DNA of 64,000 nucleotides. Source: Bispira polyomma. Its lineage: Eukaryota. The notes beneath the pieces are model-generated. The model was not told where the DNA came from. It was given only the letters and a program-made list of their open reading frames with translations, and ran no database searches. Below, piece by piece: positions 1,478-56,730 of the stretch; the stretch's first letter is position 1, and every line of letters begins with the position of its first letter. The stretch is taken from the NCBI GenBank assembly GCA_965649765.1, contig OZ287749.1, forward strand, positions 41,540,001 through 41,604,000, given 5' to 3'. A program made the translations under genes and the position numbers.

Positions 1478-1757
1478 TTTCAACACATTCACGGAGGTTC
1501 TGAAGAAGATTCAGAAGGCTGTGGATGACCTGAGCCTTCACCAGTATTCTAACCTGCCCCAGTGGGTGGCCAAGGTGGACAAGGAGGTGGAGAGTAAGCT
1601 AGCCTCTCGTCTACAGGCAGGCATCAAAGCCTGGATGGACGCACTGCAGGAAAGCTCTGACCTCACCGAGGGCAAGAGGAGTGGGATGGACATGAACATG
1701 GACACAGACGCACCAGTGGAGCAGGGCCATAAACTGGGAGGGGAACCACAGATTAAG
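1478..1757 (+). CDS. DYNC1H1: Dynein HC exon (FNTFTEVLKKIQKAVDDL...HKLGGEPQIK)
   Basis: ttcag|TTT...AAG|gtatgg; donor is reiterated downstream. Confidence 0.92.
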
Positions 1758-2513
1758 GTATGGCAGGGCCATAAACTGGGAGAGGAACCACAGAATAAGG
1801 TATGGCAGGGCCATAAACTGGGAGGGGAACCACAGATTAAGGTATGGTAAGGCCATAGACTGGGAGGGGAACCACAGAATAAGGTATGGCAGGGCCGTAA
1901 GCTGGGGAGGGAACCACAGAATAAGGTATGGCAGGGCCATAAGCTGGGGAGGGAACCACAGATTAAGGTATGGCAGGGCCATAAGCTGGGAGGGGAACCA
2001 CAGAATAAGGTATGGCAGGGCCATAAACTGGGAGGGGAACCACAGATTAAGGTATGGTAGGGCCATAAACTGAGAGGGGAACCACAGAATAAGGTATGGC
2101 AGGGCCGTAAGCTGGGGAGGGAACCACAGAATAAGGTATGGCAGGGCCATAAGCTGGGGAGGGAACCACAGAATAAGGTATGGCAGGGCCATAAACTGCG
2201 TGGGGAACCACAGATTAAGGTATGGCAGGGCCATAAACTGAGAGGGGAACCACAGAATAAGGTATGGCAGGGCCGTAAGCTGGGGAGGGAACCACAGAAT
2301 AAGATATGGCAGGTCCATAAGCTGGGGAGGGAACCACAGAATAAGGTATGGCAGGGTCATAAGCTGGGGAGGGAACCACAAATTAAGGTATGGCAGGGCC
2401 ATAAGCTGGGGAGGGAACCACAGATTAAGGTATGGCATGGCCATAAGCTGGGAGGGGAACCACAGATTAAGGTATGGTAGGGCCATAAGCTGGGAGGGGA
2501 ACCACAGATTAAG
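1721..2513 (+). repeat. 42-bp minisatellite (about 19 copies) made of the exon end plus the 5' splice donor
   Basis: Unit CAGGGCCATAAACTGGGAGGGGAACCACAGATTAAG|GTATGG. Confidence 0.97.
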
Positions 2514-3091: not shown

Positions 3092-3414
3092 GTGAGATAC
3101 AAGTTGTAACAATATATAAAAGGCTACATTGTCTGAACTTCTGTCTGTGCAAAACATTCATCCCCAATACAATGTGGTCACTTGGCATAAATTGATTGTA
3201 CGGCTTACATTTAATTATTTACAAAGACTTTTGACAGTTTTTTGTGGAAAATATCAATATCTGAGTTAGTGAAATTATGTTTTATAAAACATATTTTAGT
3301 ATATCATCATGAATAAATACCAGCAAAAATTGACTTGAATTGAGTGTATTTGCTTTGTTCAATTATAATAATACTTTGATTTCTTTTGCAATATACTGTC
3401 ACTCCTTTGTGTAG

Positions 3415-4197: not shown

Positions 4198-5229
4198 GTG
4201 AGTTTACAAAATATATTAGCTTCTCTACTGTCTGATTGTCAAATTTTATGAACACAGTTTAACTCTGCAAAATATATATATTATCATATTGTTATTTTAT
4301 ATTGAGCTGTCTTTTCGCTTTTATATACCTTCTCTTATCCAAATTCAATCTTTCTCTCTTAACATGTTGAAATAAAGATGTTTTCCTGTATAGTAAACCT
4401 ATGTAGTTGTGAGATAATCAAAATTTTACCTCAAAAACAAAGTGCTTAATACACAGTAACGATTAAATTTTTGTGTTAAAAAGTGTGTGCTGGAATACTG
4501 CTGGAATATATTGGTTTGATGCTAATAAAACATGTTTAATAAGTAAATAATTTATAATGTTTCTATTTGTAAATGATGGCTATTAGTGTAAGCGGCTGCT
4601 TTACTATCGCAACCCTCTCACCTGAGCATAGTGGGTGTGACTCCCACTGCTTCCTTTATGTGAACAAAGTTGCCAAGTACTTGCAGTGGGTCAGTGGTTT
4701 GTAGTACAAATAGTCCTGGTTCCCTGCAAAAATAAATGTGGCCACCACAATATGACCAAAGATGTTGTAAGTGACATTAAGAAAATGAAGTCAAATTCAA
4801 CTTTTACATAAATGTGAATTCTTTGTAAAGTTGCAAATTAAAATGTTGGTAATTCATTTATTATACGTGTCAACATAAAGGATTAGAACTTACTGTACAT
4901 ATTAATAACATATCCTGAAAGGAGTAGATAATATTTTAAATATGGTCGTGCACAGAGTTTTCGATGCATGTACGTTTTCGTGGTACACGTAAATTAAGCA
5001 GCAATATGGTATCAAATTACTTAGTAAAATTTTTTTTAATTATGTGGTGTACTGCATTCATCTTGTGTGATTATCCTTTATTGTTTTCACATAAAACTCC
5101 TGTAATAAACATCTACCACGAAAACACAAGTGACACGAAAACTCCTGAAACTACGATAGCATAAGAATTCTACTGTATCACTGTAACAGCTGTTGAGGTT
5201 TGTCTAATTTTGATCCCCTGTGTACATAG

Positions 5230-6101: not shown

Positions 6102-6976
6102 GTACAGAATGTTTTGTCACACTAAGGACACGCTGTGGTTAGATCAGTTATGATGGTGGCGAAAATTAAGGTCTGGGATATTGCATGTCAAAAAAAAACA
6201 TTCCGATTCCAGATACTGCAAAATAAACCCAACTACAGCAAATCGAACGATACCTTCACAATAGGAAGAAATCGAAATCAAATCGAAACAAAATAGGCAT
6301 ATTGTTTATAAACTACCAGAAAAGTACTAAAAACCCTCAAATTTTAGTAGTCTGTCAACATAAAACCTATTTTATGATTCAATAGATACAGTTTGTGATT
6401 TTTTTGCTGTAAAAAGCCTGCATTTTGGGAATTCTGGATACCGAAGACACCAGCAAAATGTTGCCAAAACCGAGATACCAGGACTACTATTTCAACTGGG
6501 CTTTGTGTTCTTACACTACCAATCTCTGCAAAATTCCTAATGTATCGCTGGTTGATCAAACCCATCAGCGTAATGCCTTATTGTGCTTGACAATTGTATG
6601 ACCACTGTAGTTTACACAATTTATATATGAAAATTACCATCCTCTTCATTTTATGTACAAAAAAAGCCAGTTGATCTTTTAGAGGCAACACTTGTAGTTC
6701 ACCTCTAGCTGGATGCACAGTGAAAAGATTACTTCTTAATGAGTGACCATGTGCTCTTTGACAGCTGTAGTAAAAATTCCCCTCATAAAACCATCTTCCT
6801 TCTTCATTTCACAGATACACAAAGAAGGCCAGTTTATCCTAGAAATTGAGCACTTCCAGTTCTCTCTAAACCGGATGAACAGTGAAACCTTTACTCTTTA
6901 ATATGTAACCATGTACACTTTAATAGCTTTAATACAAACTCCCCCAAATAAAACTCCCTTCGTTTTGATTTCTCAG

Positions 6977-7216
6977 ATGTTTAAGGAAGGTCAGTTCATC
7001 CTAGAGAGGCAGCGCTTCCAGTTCCCCTCTAACTGGATGTACAGTGACAACATTGAGGGTGAGTGGTCCGCCTTCACCGACATCCTGAGACGCAAGGACT
7101 CCTCCATCTCCACACAGGTGGCCAGTCTCCAAATGAAGATTGTGTCCGAGGACAAAGTGGTGGAGAGTAAGACATCTGACCTCCTCATTGAGTGGGACAA
7201 GGAGAAACCGGTAGAG
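6977..7216 (+). CDS. DYNC1H1: Dynein HC exon ([17 protein letters not shown]...KEKPVE)
   Basis: cag|ATG...GAG|gtgagt. Confidence 0.94.
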
Positions 7217-14513: not shown

Positions 14514-17500
14514 TTAAGATCTGTTTTTTTGGGCATTTGTAAAAATATAATGTCTCGTAATTGTTAAGATAAAATTTAGTGGCCAAAAGTTTTGATCTTG
14601 TTTTAAAGTACCTAATATTTTGACAGATTTTTTCAAATGGACTTTAATTCCAAGTTTTGATTTAATCCAGGATATTACATTATTCCATAACATGTTTGAT
14701 TTGATGCACTCCGAAAATAAGTGTACCATTGATTCAGTATTCTGATTACACAGCCTACATTGATCAGTATCAGACAGTTTTATTTTAAATAACAATTCTT
14801 TTGTCCCTAAAATTCTATGTAAAATTCGGTATTGGAACCATATAAATCCATTATCATTTATAGTATAAAAACAAACTTTATATATTATTTTCCATATGTT
14901 TGGAATTTCTTCAATATTTAAAACTAAGCGCCATTTTGTTTCATTTTTTGGTAAATTGTCACACGATTCTTGAATTTTTAAATAAATATTTTTACTTCTG
15001 GTATGGGAGTTTACTAAAATTCTTATATGAAATGGAATATATGGTCTTAAAAAAGGACAGACAATATTTTTCGCACTTTGCAGTAAAACTGGCTGAACAA
15101 AATGTTTTACTGTAAAGTAGTTAAGAATATTCACTGGAAAGTTATACCGAAACTTGATCTCTTCCAAGGTTAAGATGCAGCCCTCTAAGTTTACAATATC
15201 TCCAATAACATGAATACCATGCTTAAACCAATCTGGAAAGAAAAGTTTATCCGTACCAATATGGCTATTGAACCAAATACTGCTGCAGTATATGTCTTGA
15301 GTAGTCTGAACTTTTGAAATTTTACAAAGTTCTCTAAAATAAGTAAGAACTATTTTCCAAAAGGAGTTTAATCTTGATATTATAGTAGTACACCACTCGC
15401 CCCCTAGAGTAAATAATTTTGTTAGATCTCCAGCTACATGTTTAAGGAGGATAAGCCAGTTTTTTCTTCTTACTGAAATCATACGCTTTATCCAACTTAC
15501 TTTCAAAGATTTTTCAAAATTATATATATTAACCATGCTGAGCCCCCCCTGTAAATTATTTTTACACAGTTGTTTTCTGTTTATCTTGTCTGGTTTCCCA
15601 TCCCATATATATTTAAATAAGAGATTGTTGATGTCATTGAGAATCTCAACTGGTGTTGGGATTGATGAGAACAAGTGGATAAATTTTGATAATATTAGTG
15701 TCTTAATAATTGTGATTTTTCCAGTCGGTGTCAGGTATCTGGATCTCCATGATTGGAGTGTTTGTTGGGCTCTTGTCAATGCTTTCTCACATGAAAATTT
15801 TAGTCCTAAAAGATTAAACTTAGAGTCTCCCCAGTGTAGTTTTGATGTAACTTTCAATTTTTTTTTTGAGTCAATTTTACTACCAATCCAGACAAGTTGA
15901 GTTTTTTCAGTATTCATTTTTAGGCCCGACAAATTACCAAAAATTTCTAAAACATTCAAAGTTGCCTGCAAAGAATCTACATTGCCATCTAAAATCATTG
16001 TTGTGTCATCTGCAAATTGTATGAGCTTATAAATCTCTTTTCCAATTTGGAGGCCCTTAATTTTTGAAGATTTCTGAATGAGAAAGCTTAATATTTCGGC
16101 TACCAACAAAAAAAAGATACGGAGCAATTGGGTCGCCTTGTCTACAGCCCCTTTCTGCCGGTATTGGATTAGATAAAACTCCGCATTGTATTACGTATGC
16201 ATTTATATCTCTGTTGAAAAGTTTTATCCAGTTAATGAAATTTTCACAGAAACCAAAATAATTGAGTACTTTATAGAGGAAAGCCCATGAGACAGAATCA
16301 AATGCTTTCTCAAAATCAATTAGCATTAATAGTCCTGGAATTTTATTTTCTTCTGTATAGTTCATTAAATCATATATAAGTCTAGTATTTTCGCCTATGC
16401 ATCTGCCACTTATGAAGCCAGATTGGTTTGGAGAGATAATATCCGCTAAAAGTGGTTTTAATCTTTCGGCTATAGAGGCAGAAGCTAGGTTATAGATAAC
16501 ACACAATAGCGATATAGGGCACCAGTTTTTTAAAAGTTTTCGATCCTTATCACCCTTTGGTATACAGGTTATGATATTCTGTCTCATTGAGATAGTTAAA
16601 AGGCCTTTGGAGTAGCACAAATTTATAGCATTAGTTATGTAATATTTTAATTGACACCAAAACACTTTTAAAAAGTCAGCTGAAATACCATCGATTCCAG
16701 GTGACTTATTATTTTTCATTTTTTTAAGTGCATTGCTTAGTTCCATGACCGACAAAGCATTTCCTAGTTCTAACTTTGGAATTTGTTTCAGTCCGGCAAG
16801 ATCAATTTCTTTACTCAAATTATATTCATCAAGCGCATTGTCCCTACTTTTGAAGAGATTACGATAAAAAATTTCAATTTCTTCAAATATTTGCTTTTGA
16901 TCTGTAACAATAGAGCCATTCTTATTTTGCAGTTTTCTTATTGTTTTTTCAGTAAAATGTTTACTTTCCAATTTACAAAGAAGGAGGTTGGCTTTTCCCC
17001 TTCATTAAGCCACTGTATTCTATCTCGAGTCATGTATCCTTTTAATTTTTCTTTTCTAATATTTTCCAATTCTGTTCGCTTGTCATCCAATAAAGTTGTA
17101 CTATTCTGGTTCATTGGATTACTTTCTAGAATGGCTATGTCATTTATTAAATGTTTCTCAAGCAAATTTTGTTTCTTTTTAAAATTTGTTGCAAATTTTA
17201 TTGTTTAGCCTCGAAATCTTAAGAACAACATTTCTAAGAAAGTATCGTCGTCAATAGAAAACTTGATGTTATTATTATTTATTTTTAAGTAGTCCAAATT
17301 ATAAACAGGTAAAGCATATTTTAATTTCTCTTCCTCAATAACTGTGTTGATCAGATTTAAATATTCTTTGTTATTCAAATAGCTATTGTTAAATTTCCAT
17401 ATGCCACAGCCATTTTTGAAATTACAAGTATTTAGCTGCAATTCTACAATAGAATGATCTGATCTATAGCTCGGTTTTATAACACGTGATTCAACAATGT

Positions 17501-18146
17501 CAGTCATGGAACTCAATATTAAAAAGTAATCTAGTGTTGCTTGTTTTATAAGAGTTTTTTTTCTCCATGAAAATCGTTTAGCATAAGGATTTAAATATCG
17601 AAATATATCCACTAAATCTATTTCATTTAACATATCTATGACTTTAGCCCTGGCTTGGGGGTTATTTATATTGACATAATTGTAACAATCTTTTATAGGG
17701 TCCATAACAAGGTTGAAGTCCCCACAGATTACAACATAGTCAGCTTCATCATTTTTAGCCAATTGCAAGATTTTGCTAAAAAATTCTGGACTATCCTTAT
17801 TTGGAGTATAAATATTGATAAGATTTAATTTCATTGTGCCACATGTAATAAGTAATTGCAAAATATTTCCCTCTTTGTCCTTGTTCACTTCAGTTATCTT
17901 ATACTCAAAATTGTTGTTTAGCAAGATTAAGACACCACGGGAGTTGGTTTTTGTTCCATTAATATAGCAGTCATGCCAAACTTGTTTCAAAGAGGTCATA
18001 TCGCTTTCCAGGAGGTGGGTATCCTGCAGACATACAATAGAGGCATTTGTTTCTTTCAGTTAATTTAGAACATCAACTCTCTTTTTAAAGTTGCGAAGCT
18101 CTTGACAATTTGCAGACAACACTTTAATGTTAGATAGATTCTTCAT
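14514..18146 (-). pseudogene. LINE ORF2 (APE endonuclease, reverse transcriptase, CCHC), disrupted
   Basis: Starts MKNLSNIKVLSANCQ at 18146. In-frame TAA at 18060-18062 and frame breaks near 17200, 16950 and 16100. Motifs: CLQDTH, GDFN, LDYFL, SDH (APE); KSPGIDG, DFEKAFD, QGDP, FADD (RT); CRLC..E...HLF.EC. Confidence 0.93.
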
Positions 18147-19632: not shown

Positions 19633-20970
19633 TCAGTTTAGTGATGCTCTTACTTCCATTAATATTTCACCAAGTCTGTTTTTACCTTTCCACTTAGCAT
19701 TGTCCTAGATATCCTTGTCCTGTAGAGATAGTCCCACCCCCCAATACGAGTCTCTTGGATTTGCTTCAATTAAGGTTGATTGGCCTGTGTTCTTCAGAAA
19801 AGCAGCGAGCTCAGGATTCTGTGTGAATTTTGCATCAATTCCTAACTTCATATATCCGTCACCCACTTTATTCCATTCAGCACTGTTGAAATTTTCTACC
19901 TGGTGACCTAGTTTCTTGGCAGTCACCAGGTCATCCGTGCCTAAGATTGAAGTAGCGGTCACCTCATCTTTGAAGTATTTTGACTTTCTGAACATAAAAT
20001 ATTGTTCAGCAGAATCAAATTGCAGGCCATCTTTCATGAAGGATGATGGATAGTGGTTGGAAAGAATTGAGTGCTTGGTGAAAAAGGCTACAAAATTTCC
20101 ACTCTTAATTGTTGTCAAGGTATTTGGTTTCAATTCATCAGGTAGTTTATCCAACTCTTTACTGGTGTACTGCTTACCGTTTAAAACTAGCTTATCGAAA
20201 TTCAACCTTGCTTTGTACTTGCCATTTGAAGTATAAGCTGCTTGTAGGACAGGAATAAAGTTTTGGCGTCGCTTTCTTGTCTCAGATGGAAAATCCTCTG
20301 TGATAAAAATCTTGGAATGTTTAAACTTTTCCTTTTCCATCAGCACTTTTTGACGATCTTTGAAGTGATAAAATTTGACAATGATAGGGCTATCTTTCTG
20401 ACCAGTAATCCAGAGTCTGTGTGCACGCTCAATGTCTCTAGGTTGGAGTACAGTACTATGTTTGGAACACAAGTTAATGATTAAGTCCTCGCAATTCTCA
20501 GGTGCTCCTGTTGGGGTTGACTTCTTGACACCAAAAAACTTTAAGTTATTCCTTCTTGACCTTCCTTCCATTGAGAGAAGTCTTTCTTCTAACTCATTGA
20601 TTTTATCTTCATAAGTTTGTAGTTTGGCACTCATCATCTTGTTCTTGGACTCCATATGATTCAGTTTTTCTGTAAGCAGTGTAATTTGATGAACTTGTTC
20701 AGAAGTAAATTTTACAGTCTGCTTGACTTGGTCCAAGTCATTGGTCATTTGTTCCAGTTCTTGATGAAGTAGTAATTTTGTCTGTTCCCGTTCTTGTTGA
20801 ATTAGTGATTTCATACCCGTTAGTGTCACTGGAGAATCAGGAGAACCCGGGGAAACTAACTCATAATCTCTTTTCAACTGTTTGCTTATTACTCCATTGG
20901 TAGTACTAGTTTTGCTGGTGCTTCCACGATTTCCAGCACCCTTATTACTGTCTTTATTAGGCATTTTCAA
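19633..20970 (-). CDS. LINE ORF1p (coiled coil plus L1-type RRM/CTD) fused to a C-terminal NADAR/YbiA-like domain; premature TAG at 19705-19707
   Basis: ORF1 motifs RSRRNNLKFFGV, DIERAHRL, PIIVKF, IFITEDF. NADAR motifs SNHYPS, EQYFMFRK, AKKLG, AKFTQNPEL, LIEANPRDSYWGVG. Reading through the TAG continues in frame as DNAKWKGKNRLGEILMEVRASLN*. Confidence 0.88.
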
Positions 20971-27428: not shown

Positions 27429-27737
27429 TAATGTAACCTCCCATATTCTTGATTCTGGGTTGTCACAGCTTAGTGAGGATTGTGAATAATGGGGTGATGT
27501 GACTTGAACTCAATTAGGTAGAGGACTTACACTTGTAATTTATACGAAACATACATAACCTTGTCAACTTGTGACCCTGGTAAGTGATGTAAAGAGGATG
27601 ATAATAAAGTGAAACCTATTCAGAAGGATTCCTTATTGGTAAGGGGAGTATTGTGCCTGCAAATCAAATTAACGTCGTATTTCAAAAATAACCCACGACA
27701 AACCTGGTGTTTACCAATTGGAGGTGTAGGAACACAT

Positions 27738-28108
27738 GTATTGTGTTTCAGGCCATTAGGCGTATCTTTGTGGGTCTGTGTCAGGGGTTTGACTCTACTG
27801 TGTGTATGTGTTTTAGGCCATGGGGCGTATCTTTGTGGGTCTGTGTCAGGGGTTTGACTCTACTGTGTGTATGTGTTTTAGGCCATGGGGCGTATCTTTG
27901 TGGGTCTGTGTCAGGGGTTTAACTCTACTGTGTGTATGTGTTTTAGGCCATGGGGCGTATCTTTGTGGGTCTGTGTCATGGGTTTGACTCTACTGTGTGT
28001 ATGTGTTTTAGGCCATGGGGCGTATCTTTGTGGGTCTGTGTCATGGGTTTGACTCTACTGTGTGTATGTGTTTTAGGCCATGGGGCGTATCTTTGTGGGT
28101 CTGTGTCA
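27738..28108 (+). repeat. 65-bp tandem repeat of the 3' splice acceptor plus exon start (6 acceptors)
   Basis: AG ends at 27751, 27816, 27881, 27946, 28011, 28076. Confidence 0.96.
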
Positions 28109-31607: not shown

Positions 31608-32454
31608 GTAAGTACACACAGGACGCGTATACTGGATATATGGTGGTGGTACCACTTTCCAGTCTATTAGAAATGTTGTGTATGTCTTTTATATCATAGC
31701 AGTAAAAACATATGAGAGCTCACCAAAATGTGTATTTATATTAACTGACACTTCTATTTCAAAGAGTCAACAATTGTTTTGGCATTTTTATGTTTAAAAC
31801 ATCTTAATTATGAAGTCAAAAACGTTTGAACTTGAAATTCGAATGGACGGCATTTTTGAACCTTGACTATAAATAACAGTGAAAGATGCCTACAGGGCTA
31901 GGCAATGGCCCAGGGACTAGTAGTTAGGTTGAGTGGTAAAGACGTTTTTACCAGAGAAGGTGCTTGAAATATAGAATAATAATATAATACCATGAATGCT
32001 TTGTTTTAGTGACTTCTATTTCATGTCGCTGTATTTGCAATTGTTTTGCCCTTTATGATCCTTGTTATACAGTAAAACCTCCAAATAGTGAAAATGTCCC
32101 TGTAGTGAACACCACTTTTCTTGGTCCTCTTTTGACATTGGTGAATTAAACTACCTCAGAATAGTAAACGCCTTTTTATGATTGACAACTGGGTGATTTC
32201 CATGACTGTTTACTATATAGAAGTTTTGCTGCCTTTATTTTCTGTTCCAGTCCATCTATAAAGATGGTAGTCCTATGGCAGTCTGGAACCTAACACGATG
32301 GAGTGGACTGACAGTTTAGTTAATAGAGGTTCTACTGTATTTACTTTGTGTTCCAGTCCATCTATAAAGATAGTAGATCTATGGAAGTCTGGATCCTAAC
32401 GTGGGCAGACAGTTCAGTTAATAGAGGTTCTACTGTATTTTCTTTCTGTTTCAG

Positions 32455-32697
32455 TCCATCTCCAAAGATGCGCTGTATGGTAGTCTGGATCCTAACACCA
32501 GAGAGTGGACTGATGGCCTCTTTACCCACATCCTCAGGAAGATCATTGACAATGTGCGCGGAGAGATCAACAAGCGCCAGTGGATCATATTTGACGGAGA
32601 TGTGGATCCAGAGTGGGTGGAGAACCTGAACTCTGTGCTGGATGACAACAAGCTGCTGACACTTCCCAATGGGGAGAGGCTGGCTATCCCTCCTAAT
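32455..32697 (+). CDS. DYNC1H1: Dynein HC exon (AAA2; REWTDGLF...[21 protein letters not shown])
   Basis: cag|TCC...AAT|gtatgt. Confidence 0.95.
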
Positions 32698-38157: not shown

Positions 38158-38572
38158 TGGATTTAACTTCTATACGTGTCTTATCACTCTAGATTCCTGC
38201 GCCATGTTCCAGTGGTTTCCATTGACTACCCTAGATTTAACTTGTTTTCGTCTCCTTCCACTTTAGAATCCTGCGCCATGTTCCAGTAATGTATGTGGAA
38301 TGGATTTAACTTGTATACGTGTCCTATCACTCTAGATTCCTGCGCATGTTTTAGTGTTTCAATGGATTTAACTTGTATACGTGTCCTATCACTCTACATT
38401 CCTGCGTATGTTTTAGTGTTTCAATGGATTTAACTTGTATACATGTCCTATCACTCTAGATTCCTGCGCCATGTTCCAGTAATGTATGTGGACTAGGATT
38501 TAACTTTTATATGTGTCCTATCACTCTAGATTCCTGCGCCATGTCCCAGTGGTGTATGTAGACTACCCAGGC
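38158..38572 (+). repeat. 60-75-bp degenerate tandem repeat of acceptor plus exon start
   Basis: GGATTTAACTT...ATCACTCTAG|ATTCCTGCGCCATG repeated about 6 times. Confidence 0.92.
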
Positions 38573-41801: not shown

Positions 41802-42014
41802 AGTGAGAAGATCACCTTCATCATGGACGAGTCCAATGTGCTGGACTCCAGTTTCCTGGAGCGTATGAATACACTGCTGGCTAACGGGGAGGTACCGGGT
41901 CTGTTTGAGGGCGATGAGATGACCACTCTGATGACCCAGTGTAAGGAAGGCTCACAGAGAGATGGACACATGCTGGACTCTCAGGAGGAACTCTACAAGT
42001 GGTTTACACAGCAG
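41802..42014 (+). CDS. DYNC1H1: Dynein HC exon (AAA4; FIMDESNV...[11 protein letters not shown])
   Basis: cag|AGT...CAG|gtaggt. Confidence 0.95.
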
Positions 42015-42113
42015 GTAGGTCTTAAGTCATCTCTAGAAGTGGTTTACACGGCAGGTAGGTCTTAGGTCATCTCTATAAGTGGTTTACACAGCAGGTAGGT
42101 CATCTCTATAAGC

Positions 42114-49281: not shown

Positions 49282-49435
49282 GTCAAAGACCAGCAGGAGG
49301 CAGAGCGCAAGAAGGTGACCTCCCAGGAGATCCAGGTGGCGCTAGAGGACCAGAACAGGATCATCGCAGTGAAGAAGACAGCTGTACATGCAGACTTGGC
49401 TCAGGTAGAACCTGCAGTCATTGAGGCTCAGCAAG
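49282..49435 (+). CDS. DYNC1H1: Dynein HC exon (stalk CC1; VKDQQEAE...[10 protein letters not shown]), ends in phase 1
   Basis: cag|GTC...CAAG|gtaagg. Confidence 0.95.
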
Positions 49436-50067
49436 GTAAGGCCAATATAGTCTGTGTGTGTAGTAAACTACAGTAGAACCTCTATTTTACGGACATCGTG
49501 GGAGAGTGAAAATTTGTTTGGATAAAATAAGGTTTGTAAAATAGAAGTGGCATCGTAGTATGAAACACAACAGTAAAAAAGTTTGGGAGAGTGACATTTA
49601 AAAATACAGAGTTTTAATATAATTGTAGTTATTGATAACAATGTATGGTGTTCAGGCCTCAATGTTTTACTTTAAGTCAGTCTTAATGTTAATGGGATTG
49701 TTTGCCATTTAAAATTATATCCATACATATGTGTGAATTGTGTAGTTCTATGGGGTAAGGTCATGTGTGATTTTCTCCAGTTAAAAATATGTGTGATTTT
49801 CTTCAGTTAAAAATATATCTGTTACACGATGTTTGTTTCACTTTGTCTGGTGAAAGTCATTGAAATAATAAAACTATTCTTTTGGAAACTTCAGTACAGT
49901 GGGTTGCTAAAAGTTCATAATATTCTTTGCAATTTCTTTGAACATCTTCAGTTTGAAGAGAAGTGTCCTTAGTAGATTTGTTCAGAATGTTACCACATGT
50001 TGTGTTGAACAAATATACAAAAATGGTGCAATCTAACTGGACTAACTCTGTGGCCCATTTCTGCTAG

Positions 50068-50263
50068 CTGTGAAGTCCATTAAAAAGGAGCATTTACAAG
50101 AAGTACGCCGCCTCCCTAACCCTCCTCCAGGGGTCAAACTGGCCTTAGAATCCATCTGTACCTTACTCGGTGAGACAGAGATTGACTGGAAAGCCAGCCG
50201 CCAAGTCATTATGAGGGATAACTTCATTTCTACCATTGTCAACTTTGACACTGATAACATGCC
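50068..50263 (+). CDS. DYNC1H1: MTBD mutually exclusive exon A ([19 protein letters not shown]...NFDTDNMP)
   Basis: 196 nt, ctag|CT...CC|gtaagt, branch-point-like GACTAAC at 50040-50046, open frame. Confidence 0.9.
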
Positions 50264-51938
50264 GTAAGTGGTGGGCAGTGTTCTAGGAAAATCTAGTTCT
50301 TCCATTCCTCGACTGGTTTTCTGTGTTGCATTTTTATTTAGTCTTCCTTTGTGATTGTACCTTTTAGCATTTAGGTATTTTGGGTGACTGGTGTTACTAT
50401 ATTCCATTGTTTTTTTTAAAACCTGTGCATTTTTTTTCCAGAGCTTGTTTTAATTGTTCAGATTGCACTTGAATAAATGATGACTGCAATATCACTTGAG
50501 TTAAGTCATGCCAATTGCATAATATTTTCTACTGAAAATTTTTATCAGAAGATAAAATAAATGATGATAAAGTCTTGATTGTCTTTTAATTTTGTTCTAA
50601 CATTTTATTTAAAAAAACAAACTTAAACCAGTTATTGACCATAAAATTCTTTCATATCATCTCAATTTGCACACATCGTATATACAGGAGTGATTTGGGA
50701 AATATTAAGCATACCTGAAATGTGTTTTAAGAACTATATCTTTTAAATAAACCCAACCAATTCGAACGTAATTTTCACGTTCATTTTATAATACTTGCTA
50801 AAAAAAATGGTACAGTGTGTCATTATTTATTTATGTTTATCACATCAGAGTTACAGTGATGTACATATCTGTAACAAGAAGTGAATGTTTAGTTGTTTAC
50901 ACATTTGAGGTATGCGGCAATTCACCAGCAAGTCCTGTTTTGGAACTGCTTGTGTTCTTCGATAGTCCTAGTAGATTTTGATGCTGTTGTATAAATATGT
51001 AAATATGTGCAACCTGTTGCATTCTTGCGTTTGTATAAATACATAGTCTACTTTACAGCAGTGCCTGCCTTGTACATAGCATGTATTTATCCACAGTTCA
51101 CAGTTTTAGGATTGTAATGTCTGGTCTTGTTAAACGATGCCTTAGTTTCACTTCGTGTTAGGACCAATAACGAGGAAATCTGAGGATCAGTGGTAATATT
51201 CCAACTCAAATCTGGGAACTATGCAGTTTTCAACTTTTCGTATGGTTAATATTCTAAAAAATATCACATTTTCTGAGAATATGTGAAGAAATGGTTCTTG
51301 TTAGAGATAAATTTGATTTACACTAGTTCTAGTTACACTGTACACCCTAAAATGTGGGGCCATTCAAAGTATTAATCAGCTAAGTCTTGAACAGGAATTG
51401 ATGAACAAATTTTCTCTTTGGCTTCTGGGTTGAAATACTCAATAGGAAACAATTACCGATCCCTGGATTTGCATTCATGACATTAGTTTGTAGTTTACAG
51501 GGTATAAGTTGTCCATGGCTGTATTCCAGTTTAGAAAAAGTGGCCACTAATATGATTCTCTTAAAAAGTAATTTATACTGACACAGGAATTCTACAAAAT
51601 TTTAAGAACACTGCAATTTAAACATGTAGTTTAAAAAGATATTTAAATTGTTATACAGTATTTCTGTTTATGAAAATAGTTGCGGAGTTTACCCACTTTT
51701 TGATGTGTACTATGGCCAGTCGAACCTAAAGCTAACAACAGAAATAAATAACTTAAACTCAACTCAAATCTATGGTATTACAATCTCTGTCCACATTAAA
51801 CATGCATGTATATTAATTCTGACATAATTTTTAAATCCAGCATTCAAAGCTCTATTAAAATAACTGGTTACAAGTATGGGATATTTCTATGTACAGTAAA
51901 ACCTCTTGTGGTTAATATCTTCAAATAGTTAACACCTG

Positions 51939-52151
51939 GGGCCGTATTCACAAAAGGTCTTAGTCTTAACTTAGGCTTGAGCATAACATTTATGTCTAAA
52001 ATATTGAAGACCGCCAGATCTTTTGGTACGGGGTCTAAGACCAAATTTTTAACCTTTTCATCCAAATTCACAAAATCTTGACCTTCAGCCGAAAACAAAG
52101 ACCAAAATCTTAAGACTAAGTTAAGACTCCAACCTTTAGTGAATACGGCCC
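51939..52151. mobile_element. PIF/Harbinger-like MITE nested in a TA-flanked MITE (about 51894-52280)
   Basis: TIR GGGCCGTATTCAC...GTGAATACGGCCC with 3-bp CTG TSD; host element CAGTAAAACCTC...GAGGTTTTACTG. Confidence 0.78.
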
Positions 52152-52388
52152 CTGTCTATAATATACACTTCCTCCTGGTCCCGTTTGCGATCAGTATATT
52201 GTACAGTACATCCGAATTGGGAACAACTGTGTACACTTTGACTGGATCCGGTGAGTGTTCACTATATGGAGGTTTTACTGTAAAGAGAATTGCCCATAGC
52301 CTTGGTTTGAGTTGAGTATGGGTTTTATTTTGAGAGTACATCACTTTGTATAGTCACACTTTACACTCCTTGTACCACACACATGCAG

Positions 52389-52584
52389 CGGTCAAGGGGA
52401 TTACAAAAAAGCATTTGGTGGAGGTACGGTCATTGCCGAGTCCTCCCCCCGCAGTGAGAATGGCCCTCGAGTCCATTTGTACTCTACTCGGTGAAAAGGA
52501 CATCGCTTGGAAAACTCTCCGACAGCTCATTATGAAAGAGAACTTTATACCGAGCATTGTTAGCTTTGATACTGAGACGTTATC
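52389..52584 (+). CDS. DYNC1H1: MTBD mutually exclusive exon B ([19 protein letters not shown]...SFDTETLS)
   Basis: 196 nt, gcag|CG...TC|gtaagt, open frame. Confidence 0.9.
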
Positions 52585-53255
52585 GTAAGTTGGTCGGTGT
52601 GTGTCCAGTGATATATGGCCATCCTTAAATACCTGCACTCCATGTGTTGAGGTTTTTTTCAGTCTTGTTGTTTTCCTGATAATATTCTTACTGTTCTTGT
52701 ATGTTGAGATATTGTTGCTCTTTTTAAGGTCATTTTATGTTTTTGTGAATAATTCCCATGTTTTTGTTTACGGTCTGTGTATTTGTTGTTTTCATATATT
52801 CTTTACATATGTTTTTGTTTTCTGGAATTTTATTTTTGTGAACTGGAAACGATGAAATACAACAGTGACATCACAAAGAATCATGTACTTTAACTTATGG
52901 CAGCCCCAAAAGTATGGCCCAAGTAACTGCAAACGTATAACCGTCTCGAATCTGTGTATTCATTCATTTAGTTTTGAACCGATCCCAAGCTGATAAATAT
53001 ATCGGAGAAATGTGGCAAATAGCTGGGATAATATTGAGAATTATGAGAATAAATGTACACAAGGTACTAAAATTGGATTAAACTTATTTTGTTTTGACGA
53101 AGTGATTTATACCTTGAGGTGATAATGTTATATTTTAGCTATAAAGCATTACACGTTTTCGTTTTACTTTAAATATGTCTTTGTATGCCTGTATGCATGG
53201 TGATATTGTTGTGTCCGATTTGATTGCCTGCACGTTTCCATGTTATTTTTTCTAG

Positions 53256-53451
53256 CTGTAAGCAGTATCAAACGTCAGCAGTTGATGGAGGTTAAGTCCC
53301 TCCCCTCTCCACCCACTATGGTCAGGGTGGCCCTGGAATCCATTTGTGATCTCATGGGTGAATCTGACTTAGATTGGAAGGCTATGCGCAGTGTTATTAT
53401 GAGGGAAAATTTCATTTCCTCCATTGTCAATTTCAAGTCTGAGTATATTAC
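53256..53451 (+). CDS. DYNC1H1: MTBD mutually exclusive exon C ([19 protein letters not shown]...NFKSEYIT)
   Basis: 196 nt, ctag|CT...AC|gtaagt, open frame. Confidence 0.9.
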
Positions 53452-54063
53452 GTAAGTTTATTTGTCCCCTGAGGTGTAACTAGTTGAATGTGATGACAAG
53501 TAACTGTCTGCCTAATTAACACACATAAACTCCGTGTTTTTTTTTAAACTTTTCTGTCTTTTTACAGCACATGTATAACCATATAGATGCTCTTTTAATG
53601 TATGTGTGTATGTGTGTGTAGTTATTTTTTGGACTAGAATTTACTTTACTTGTACCATCAATATGGTCTCACACCGTTCTAACTTCTAATTCTGGATGTG
53701 GAGTTTTGGCACTTCGGCTGAAGTTGTGAAGCAACACTTTGCTAAATTTATACGCTTTGGATGTATTTTACATCACTCGAAAATAATTTTTATCGCTAAA
53801 TTTCTGCTATTTAAAAAAAAACCAGATTGTTCATAAATGCAGTTAGTGCACCAGTGAAGTAAATTTTTCTTCATCTAATTTTAACCTGTAACAAAAAAAA
53901 AAAAAAAATGGATTTAAACCAGCCATAACTTTGGTTATGTCTGAGGGTTATTTCAGTGAGACATGTACAGTTTATTGTACTCTGTGAACTCATAAAGCTA
54001 TTACTGGTCTCTGTATCTTTGTACACCAAACTAGTCCCCCTTTCATGTACCATTTATAATTAG

Positions 54064-54259
54064 CCGTGAAAAGCATCAAGAAACAGCATCTGGTTGAGGT
54101 GCGATCAATGGCCAATCCACCCGCACCAGTCAAACAAGCCCTCGAGTCGATATGTCTGTTGCTGGGTGAAACTGCATTCGACTGGAAAACCATCCGCTCC
54201 GTCATAGTGCGAGATAACTTCATTAGTACCATTGTCAATTTTTCGACTGACGATATCCC
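54064..54259 (+). CDS. DYNC1H1: MTBD mutually exclusive exon D ([19 protein letters not shown]...NFSTDDIP), closest to canonical dynein-1
   Basis: 196 nt, ttag|CC...CC|gtgagt, open frame. Confidence 0.93.
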
Positions 54260-55260: not shown

Positions 55261-55378
55261 GGATGACATTCGTCAGAAAATGAAGAGCAAGTATTTGGCA
55301 AATCCTGACTACAACTTTGAGAAGGTGAACAGGGCCAGTCAAGCCTGTGGACCCATGGTGAAGTGGGCCATTGCACAG
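55261..55378 (+). CDS. DYNC1H1: Dynein HC exon (MTBD second half; [18 protein letters not shown]), starts in phase 2
   Basis: tag|G...CAG|gtatgg. Confidence 0.95.
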
Positions 55379-55895
55379 GTATGGGAAACGTGTTCATCTT
55401 GTTATTGGTGAAATCGGGGGCCTAGTAGTTATAAGCATCTACTTTATTATCACTGGCCTTTTACCTCTGAGGACTGTGAAATAGACAGCCATCGGGGCCT
55501 AGTGGTTAAAAACATCTACTTTGATATCACTAGCCTCTCACCTCTGAGGACTGTGAGATTGATTCCTATTACCTCAAGTGAGAAAGTTTGCAGGTATTTG
55601 CTGTAGGTCAGTGGTTTCCAGTACAAGTATTACTAGTTCCCTTGACCAAATGAATGTGGCCATCATAGTAACACCAAAGATGTTAAAAGTGACGTAAAAC
55701 CTAAATAAATAGGCATTGCAAGTAATTTTTATATGTACATATTTTGGTAATTGGTATAACTGGTAAATATGGGGAATATATTACAGACATATCACAGCCT
55801 CAAATGTACCTTGGAGTTATTAGATAGTAAAGTATTTCAATATGTGTCATAGGAATTAGATATCGATGATATCAATTGAATCATTTCTTTGCCAG

Positions 55896-56111: not shown

Positions 56112-56730
56112 GTAGGTAGTGTGTAACATTTCGTGTAATCCAATGTGTATTCAGGTCTATTTGGTTGCTGTCGAGGCTAAAGTAGGGAGTGTGTAGTATT
56201 TCATTTAATCCAATGTGTATCCAAGTCTATTTGGCTTCTGTAGTGTCTAAGGTGGGGGTGTGTAGTATTTCCTCCAATGGGTATTCAAGACTAGCTGGCT
56301 TCTGTAGTGTCTAAGGTAGGGGAGTGTGTAGTATTTCCTCCAATGGGTATTCAAGTCTAGCTGGCTTCTGTAGTGGCTAAGGTAGGGGGTGTGTATTATT
56401 TCCTCCAATGGGTATTTAAGTCCATCTGGCTTCTATAGAGGCTAAGGTAGGGGTGTGTAGTATTTCCTCCAATGGGTATTTCAGTCTATCTGGTTTCTGT
56501 AGAGGCTAAGGTAGGGGGTGTGTAGTATTTCCGTCAATGGGTATTTAAGTCTATTTGGCTTCTGTAGAGGCTAAGGTAGGGGAGTGTGTAGTATTTCATG
56601 TGGTTCTATGTGTATTCAAGTCTATCCGACTGCTATAGAGGCTAAGGTAGGGAGTACGATGTACTCGTCAGTCAGACCCAGACTTTTAAAGCTAATCTGG
56701 CTCCTGTATATGCCTATGTAGTTAGTATGT
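56090..56730 (+). repeat. About 65-bp degenerate tandem repeat of exon end plus donor (about 9 copies)
   Basis: CTGGCTTCTGTAGAGGCTAAG|GTAGGGG-GTGTGTAG units derived from CTGGCATCTGTAGAGGGCAAG|GTAGGTAGTGTG. Confidence 0.9.

What the first reader, a model, noticed from the sequence alone, without database searches (positions are those of the whole stretch)
50068..54259. Four mutually exclusive exons swap the microtubule-binding face of cytoplasmic dynein-1
Seen in sequence: between the constitutive exons ending ...EAQQ (phase 1, 49435) and starting DDIRQK (phase 2, 55261) lie four homologous exons at 50068-50263, 52389-52584, 53256-53451 and 54064-54259. Each is exactly 196 nt with AG/GT ends and no stop or indel. 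Each enters in phase 1 and leaves in phase 2, so skipping all or joining two breaks the frame, and only one can be used per mRNA. The copies are heavily diverged at silent sites and their flanking introns do not look homologous, yet LESIC, G-E, W-K, R and NFI are retained. That points to old duplications under purifying selection rather than debris. Established knowledge: this segment is the end of CC1 plus roughly MTBD helices H1-H4, and H1 and H3 contact tubulin. The variants differ there. H1 reads [16 protein letters not shown] / [16 protein letters not shown] / [16 protein letters not shown] / [17 protein letters not shown]3 reads [11 protein letters not shown] / [11 protein letters not shown] / [11 protein letters not shown] / [11 protein letters not shown]. 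Exon D matches the canonical vertebrate sequence best. Inference: one dynein-1 gene yields four motors with tunable microtubule affinity, processivity or tubulin-code preference, probably by tissue. I recall that mutually exclusive exons have been predicted in some lophotrochozoan dynein genes, so novelty needs a literature check.
Basis: partly seen in the sequence, partly recalled or inferred. Interest (0 to 1): 0.92.

Follow-up and report, generated by a model that had tools for sequence, protein, structure and literature searches.

The report
Four either-or dynein microtubule-grip exons
The single gene for this worm-like animal's main inward-transport motor (dynein-1) carries four old, intact copies of the exon that builds most of its microtubule-gripping foot, and each mRNA can use only one; snails, clams, ribbon worms, flatworms, ticks and flies have an either-or pair at the same exon, so many invertebrates probably make several dynein feet from one gene, though what the versions do differently is untested.

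Summary
Observation confirmed: four 196-nt, AG/GT, phase 1-to-2, stop-free exons, 56-72% identical, silent sites near saturation, encoding the CC1 end to H4 of the dynein-1 microtubule-binding domain (MTBD). They are the only copies in the genome, and any skip or double inclusion hits a stop. Either-or use is supported by relatives: about 20 mollusc, nemertean, insect and tick species have RefSeq isoforms that differ only, or almost only, in this segment, and seven protostome genomic loci hold two copies with the same borders. A hemichordate and a coral hold one. A, B and C group with the spiralian 5' 'L-type' copy and D with the canonical 3' type (99/98; all four as one clade rejected, p=0.004). 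So this is an ancient pair expanded to four. A mutually exclusive pair in Schistosoma DHC1 was published in 2011, probably this exon. I found no paper placing it on the MTBD, reporting its protostome spread, or reporting four copies. The scan had not noted it on other DNA of this genome.

The parts
49283..49435 (+). Constitutive upstream exon (CC1 of the stalk, includes the E3289 equivalent); ends in phase 1
50068..50263 (+). Alternative exon A, L-type (Leu at 3308, acidic + Ile at 3330-3331); Q3300E and S3307R unseen in 45 relatives; net charge 0
52389..52584 (+). Alternative exon B, L-type; K3298T with Lys at 3300, D3332A, Lys at 3329; net charge +2
53256..53451 (+). Alternative exon C, L-type; closest to nemertean 5' copies; K3295S, R3306K; net charge 0
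54064..54259 (+). Alternative exon D, canonical M-type (Met 3308), 3'-most as in other spiralians; net charge +1
55261..55379 (+). Constitutive downstream exon (H5, H6 with E3378 and R3382 equivalents, start of CC2); starts in phase 2
   Evidence: numbering checked against PMC4987762
577..57501 (+). Part of the host cytoplasmic dynein-1 heavy chain gene inside the window (about 49 exons, tail to start of AAA5); the gene continues beyond both ends

Best explanation
A functional cluster of four mutually exclusive exons in the single cytoplasmic dynein-1 heavy chain gene. An ancestral 196-nt exon (one copy in a coral and a hemichordate, same borders) was duplicated before the spiralian phyla split, giving a 5' L-type and a 3' canonical M-type copy; in this animal's lineage the L-type copy was multiplied to three. 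Each productive mRNA carries one copy. Skipping or double inclusion gives an early stop (shown) and is probably removed by nonsense-mediated decay, with the choice made by trans-acting splicing factors (inferred). The isoforms share the motor ring, stalk and H6 but differ in H1, the H1-H2 turn, the H2-H3 loop and H3-H4. The likely effect is modest tuning of microtubule affinity, release, run length and speed, set by cell type or stage (inferred, about 55% given that the exons are used). By net charge alone, B would bind tighter and A and C more loosely than D (weak inference).
For: Anatomy and frame logic. Purifying-selection signature. No radical change at 21 strictly conserved columns. Under neutral decay only 6-8% of copies keep both splice sites and an open frame at 0.3 changes per site, and 2% at 0.5. 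RefSeq either-or isoforms confined to this segment in about 20 species. Two-copy loci with identical borders in Tubulanus, Lottia, chiton, Echinostoma, Trichinella, Zootermopsis and Musca; it is the only duplicated range shared by all these loci. Tree split 98/98 and 99/98, and AU p=0.0037 against a single local origin. H1 is the helix that moves on binding and H2-H4 form the interface (PMC6629372). Charge changes in the MTBD alter speed and run length (PMC4987762).
Against: No close annelid locus was obtained, so conservation of A, B and C as separate exons is not shown. RefSeq isoforms are automatic models whose read support I could not inspect. Key basic contacts are conserved among the copies and net charge differs by only 0-2. 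No shared docking/selector pairing was found. The tree rests on 64 columns.
Confidence: 0.78

Rival explanations
1. The ancient L/M pair is functional, but one or two of the three L-type copies are redundant or have recently fallen silent; the animal makes two or three isoforms, not four.
For: Every other genome checked has at most two copies. A, B and C have longer branches (0.23-0.32) than D (0.08-0.10). A recently silenced exon would still look intact about 36% of the time at 0.1 changes per site. The donor-side and acceptor-side signals were not scored for strength.
Against: All three keep AG/GT, length and frame. Silent sites between them are near saturation while conserved columns show only conservative changes, so all three were under selection for most of their history.
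Confidence: 0.15
2. All four are used, but the variants are functionally near-equivalent (kept by splicing context or drift), or they change regulation (H1/stalk registry switch, binding of a MAP or regulator to the MTBD) rather than tubulin affinity.
For: Core contact residues are shared. The diagnostic L/M differences (3308, 3330-3331, 3336) are largely hydrophobic or in loops. Deuterostomes, cnidarians and the decapod isoform sets examined show one version.
Against: L and M signatures are kept separately across molluscs, nemerteans, flatworms and this animal (Leu 3308 in 15/15 L-type, Met in 12/12 M-type), which near-equivalent copies would not be expected to do. This argues against equivalence, not against a regulatory role.
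Confidence: 0.25
3. Assembly artefact, duplicated gene fragments or pseudo-exon debris.
For: This gene has many recent tandem repeats that straddle exon borders, so local duplication is common here.
Against: The copies are deeply diverged with non-homologous introns and no N; the gene is single-copy; D and A-C belong to two lineages older than the species.
Confidence: 0.02

Closest known systems
Mutually exclusive exon pair of Schistosoma mansoni DHC1 (Pillmann et al. 2011, PMC3228551; cited again in Kollmar 2016, PMC5100056)
   Same: Same gene family; an internal exon with split codons at both ends, equal length and strong homology. The trematode Echinostoma has such a pair at this MTBD exon, so it is very probably the same cluster.
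   Different: Two copies, not four. The text does not say which domain it encodes, gives no taxonomic spread or function, and is a software test case. I could not see the figure, so identity of the exon is inferred.
RefSeq automatic isoforms of dynein-1 heavy chain in molluscs, nemerteans, insects and ticks
   Same: Either-or alternatives over the same 64-65 residues.
   Different: At most two versions per species among the isoforms read; unnamed X-isoforms with no interpretation.
Muscle myosin heavy chain mutually exclusive clusters of arthropods (Daphnia, Drosophila)
   Same: A motor-domain element tuned by choosing among tandem exon copies in one gene (PMC3228551).
   Different: Actin motor with many clusters and shown mechanochemical effects; here a single cluster at the track-binding tip and no functional data.
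Dscam-type clusters with competing docking/selector RNA structures
   Same: More than two tandem homologous exons, one used per mRNA.
   Different: No shared docking site found here; exclusivity can be enforced by frame alone.

Membership tests
Cytoplasmic dynein-1 heavy chain | MTBD and motor closest to DYNC1H1/DHC1, no axonemal flap between H2 and H3 | tested here: met
   Exon D: E about 1e-27 to dynein-1 structures versus 1e-4 to 1e-7 for axonemal chains, ungapped; window exons map colinearly on spiralian DHC1 at about 73-76%
Cytoplasmic dynein-1 heavy chain | Single gene rather than tandem gene copies | tested here: met
   One strong hit for a flanking exon; the four exons are the only strong hits genome-wide
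Mutually exclusive exon cluster of tandem-duplication origin | Neighbouring internal exons of the same length, frame and splice-site type, homologous, same structural element | tested here: met
Mutually exclusive exon cluster of tandem-duplication origin | Combined inclusion or skipping is unproductive | tested here: met
   196 is not divisible by 3; stops in the shifted frames of B, C, D and of the downstream exon
Mutually exclusive exon cluster of tandem-duplication origin | Each exon seen spliced to both constitutive neighbours in RNA of this species | not testable with these tools
Mutually exclusive exon cluster of tandem-duplication origin | Either-or use at the orthologous exon in relatives | tested here: met
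   RefSeq isoform pairs and two-copy loci; met for the L/M pair, not tested for three separate L copies
Exclusion by steric interference or U2/U12 incompatibility | Donor to branch point under about 50 nt, or U12-type splice sites | tested here: not met
   Introns between copies are 612-2125 nt; all donors are GTAAGT or GTGAGT; criteria from PMC5740500
Dscam-type docking/selector cluster | One docking site that pairs with a selector beside each exon | tested here: inconclusive
   Only B has a notable pairing (17 bp, p about 0.01 among 8 post-hoc tests), and it joins two transposon-like ends; A, C, D at chance level. No close relatives for covariation

The most novel reading that the evidence does not exclude
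Most protostome lineages tune cytoplasmic dynein-1 at its microtubule-binding domain by regulated either-or splicing, giving cell-type-specific motors (for example neuronal versus mitotic or germline, or tubulin-modification-selective) from one essential gene; this animal has four such feet. That would overturn the working view of one invariant dynein-1 motor diversified only by adaptors and accessory chains, and it could be tested in flies, since muscid flies carry the pair.
Probability: 0.35. Interest if true: 0.85.

Novelty: new variant of a known kind. Interest (0 to 1): 0.62.

Why it matters
Dynein-1 is usually treated as one motor whose variety comes from adaptors and accessory subunits. 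Natural, selected variants of H1-H4 in one gene show where the track-binding domain tolerates change, give ready-made sequences to test how MTBD charge and loop shape set affinity and run length, and warn that invertebrate dynein work and annotation may mix or fuse isoforms (several public gene models join both copies). The four-copy state is the largest seen here. The wider point, a conserved protostome either-or exon on the MTBD, sits unremarked in public annotation and was not found in the papers searched.

Tried and rejected
The stretch was then only analysed locally (scripts, and a tandem-repeat scan of the whole window). Annelid genomic loci: three protein searches returned no named annelid gene model except a Platynereis sequence and an unnamed cluster mate, both M-type. 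Two locus look-ups were blank. Ten literature searches found only the Schistosoma mention; the Drosophila mutually-exclusive-exome paper is not held, and the Kassiopeia and WebScipio 2013 texts do not mention dynein. Docking/selector search was negative apart from a transposon-explained pairing. Two scripts returned nothing and were rerun lighter. Rejected: artefact, tandem gene copies, origin of all four copies within this lineage (AU p=0.0037). A, B, C as one clade is neither shown nor rejected (p=0.31).

Full report
Observation. Each is 196 nt, bounded by AG and GT, enters in phase 1, leaves in phase 2 and has no stop. They are 56-72% identical in protein. Third codon positions are 36-45% identical and second positions 77-83%; pS is 0.70-0.81 and dN 0.24-0.39, so divergence is old and constrained. 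The introns are 612-2125 nt and not homologous. No further copy exists in the window or the genome, and a flanking exon has one strong genomic hit, so the gene is single-copy. From the single-exon frames, a second copy entered in phase 2 contains a stop, and skipping all four gives a stop after six codons. Only single inclusion makes protein.

What it encodes. The window is the middle of a cytoplasmic dynein-1 heavy chain gene. Exon D matches residues 3296-3359 of mammalian dynein-1 structures without gaps. Exon position i corresponds to mouse residue 3293+i; this agrees with the acidic residues listed in PMC4987762 (E3320, E3328, D3332, E3343) and with K3299 and R3337 in PMC6629372. The exon covers the end of CC1 and H1-H4 (helix limits from my own knowledge of the fold). 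H1 is the helix that moves on binding, H2, H3, H4 and H6 form the interface, and the H2-H3 loop is where axonemal dyneins carry the flap. H6 with E3378 and R3382, and E3289, lie in the constitutive neighbours. All four copies keep E3304, K3334, R3337 and a basic residue at 3299, 3306 and 3342. They differ at 3295 (Ser in C), 3298 (Thr in B), 3300, 3307-3310, 3329-3332 and 3335-3338; net charge is 0, +2, 0, +1 for A-D. At 21 columns that are at least 90% conserved in 45 relatives, A and D never depart and B and C show only conservative changes. The binding face is therefore varied at its edges rather than replaced.

Relatives. Working from a flanking exon and then from choanoflagellate and nemertean proteins, I collected animal dynein-1 sequences and isoform sets. 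RefSeq isoforms carry one of two versions of this same segment in Babylonia, Littorina, Lineus, Tubulanus, Ostrea, Crassostrea, two Haliotis, Mercenaria, two Patella, two Mytilus, Physella, Biomphalaria, Zootermopsis, two Musca, Stomoxys, three Dermacentor and Rhipicephalus. In nine of ten informative same-length pairs compared end to end, all differences fall inside the segment; the Patella pair also differs further downstream. Genomic loci show two copies with the same phase 1 and phase 2 borders in Tubulanus, Lottia, a chiton (second copy absent from the isoforms read), Echinostoma, Trichinella, Zootermopsis and Musca, and one copy with the same borders in Ptychodera and Pocillopora. It is the only duplicated range common to the protostome loci, and it survives in Musca, which has few introns left. 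Gene models of Batillaria, Nymphon, Trichuris, Romanomermis, Macrostomum, Spodoptera and others wrongly fuse both copies. Echinoderm, Nematostella and decapod isoform sets show one version. These are automatic annotations; I could not inspect their read support.

History. On a 64-column tree, A, B and C fall with the spiralian 5' copies (Leu at 3308; acidic plus large hydrophobic residue at 3330-3331) and D with the 3' copies and the canonical single exon (98/98; 99/98 without long branches). A clade of all four is rejected (p-AU 0.0037); a clade of A-C is undecided (p 0.31) (Salpingoeca, Ephydatia and the second Trichinella copy were left out of the second tree). The 5'/3' order is known from DNA for Tubulanus, Lottia, chiton and Echinostoma and from fused models for Batillaria, Biomphalaria, Bulinus and Macrostomum; for the other species I assigned the label by similarity, so the clustering of labels is partly circular. 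The window's order (L, L, L, M) fits. Both arthropod copies fall on the M side and the Trichinella order is reversed, so a single protostome origin and repeated duplication of the same exon both remain open.

How it most likely works. Shown: only one exon per productive mRNA, long-term purifying selection, an ancient L/M pair, either-or annotation in relatives. Inferred: removal of mis-spliced RNA by nonsense-mediated decay, choice by trans-acting factors, and modest differences in affinity, release, speed or run length. Steric and U12 mechanisms are excluded by intron size and donor type (for criteria). No common docking site was found; one 17-bp pairing between 49469-49485 and 52266-52282 would loop out A and favour B, but both arms are transposon-like ends that recur elsewhere in the window. 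The link from MTBD charge to motility comes from mouse mutants and modelling; applying it here is a hypothesis. No evidence on tissue pattern or tubulin code was obtained.

What is known. Pillmann et al. 2011 (PMC3228551) used a mutually exclusive pair in Schistosoma DHC1 as a software test: mid-gene, split codons at both ends, equal lengths. The trematode locus here has such a pair at this exon, so it is very probably the same. Kollmar 2016 (PMC5100056) notes in one methods sentence that some genes have alternative motor-domain splice forms. Ten searches found nothing placing it on the MTBD, tracing it across protostomes, reporting more than two copies or testing function. Subscription papers and the CyMoBase and FlyBase annotations were not searchable, so prior description cannot be excluded.

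Limits. The organism is called an annelid in earlier scan notes; my own data show only that it is a spiralian-like gene. Earlier notes list several other either-or exon clusters in this genome but not this one.

Verdict. A real, conserved, very probably functional mutually exclusive cluster. The kind is known and a two-exon precedent in this gene exists; the four-copy state, the L/M orthology across spiralians and the spread to insects, ticks and nematodes appear undescribed. New variant of a known kind; interest 0.62.

Noticed in passing
window 51892-52282, 51938-52152, 49469-49485: Tc1/mariner-like miniature element in the A-B intron with a second inverted-repeat element nested inside; a third end of the same kind just after the upstream donor can pair with the end upstream of exon B, which has the geometry of a docking/selector pair but may be chance transposon complementarity.
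   Followed up: partly
window 14514-17999 (- strand): Broken LINE retroelement (endonuclease and reverse transcriptase in three ORFs) inside the 11.5-kb intron of the dynein gene.
   Followed up: partly
window 19705-20970 (- strand): Intact 421-aa ORF with a NADAR domain nested antisense in the same intron; whether it is a host gene or part of a mobile element was not tested.
   Followed up: partly
window 1721-2513, 6657-7054, 27737-28108, 32234-32513, 38234-38544, 41991-42101, 56139-56652: Recent tandem repeats that straddle exon-intron borders and multiply splice sites with partial exon ends; could give short alternative acceptors or donors.
   Followed up: no
L010:46974-47165: Chiton dynein-1 locus has an intact 3' M-type copy absent from the two RefSeq isoforms read.
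   Followed up: partly
L004:41959-42150, L009:17499-17690: The 3' copy in termite and house fly is one codon longer (extra residue near H4), a shared insect mark; both insect copies are M-type.
   Followed up: partly
L007:15434-15628: Trichinella's second copy is highly divergent and L-like but lies 3', the reverse of the spiralian order; Trichuris and Romanomermis models show the same.
   Followed up: partly
L001:16518-17138: A small GTPase gene is nested antisense in an intron of the Tubulanus dynein gene.
   Followed up: no
L001:2804/3364, L002:52950/53475: Other overlapping tblastn ranges (query 315-362 and 4458-4498) may be further duplicated exons or only alignment overhang.
   Followed up: no
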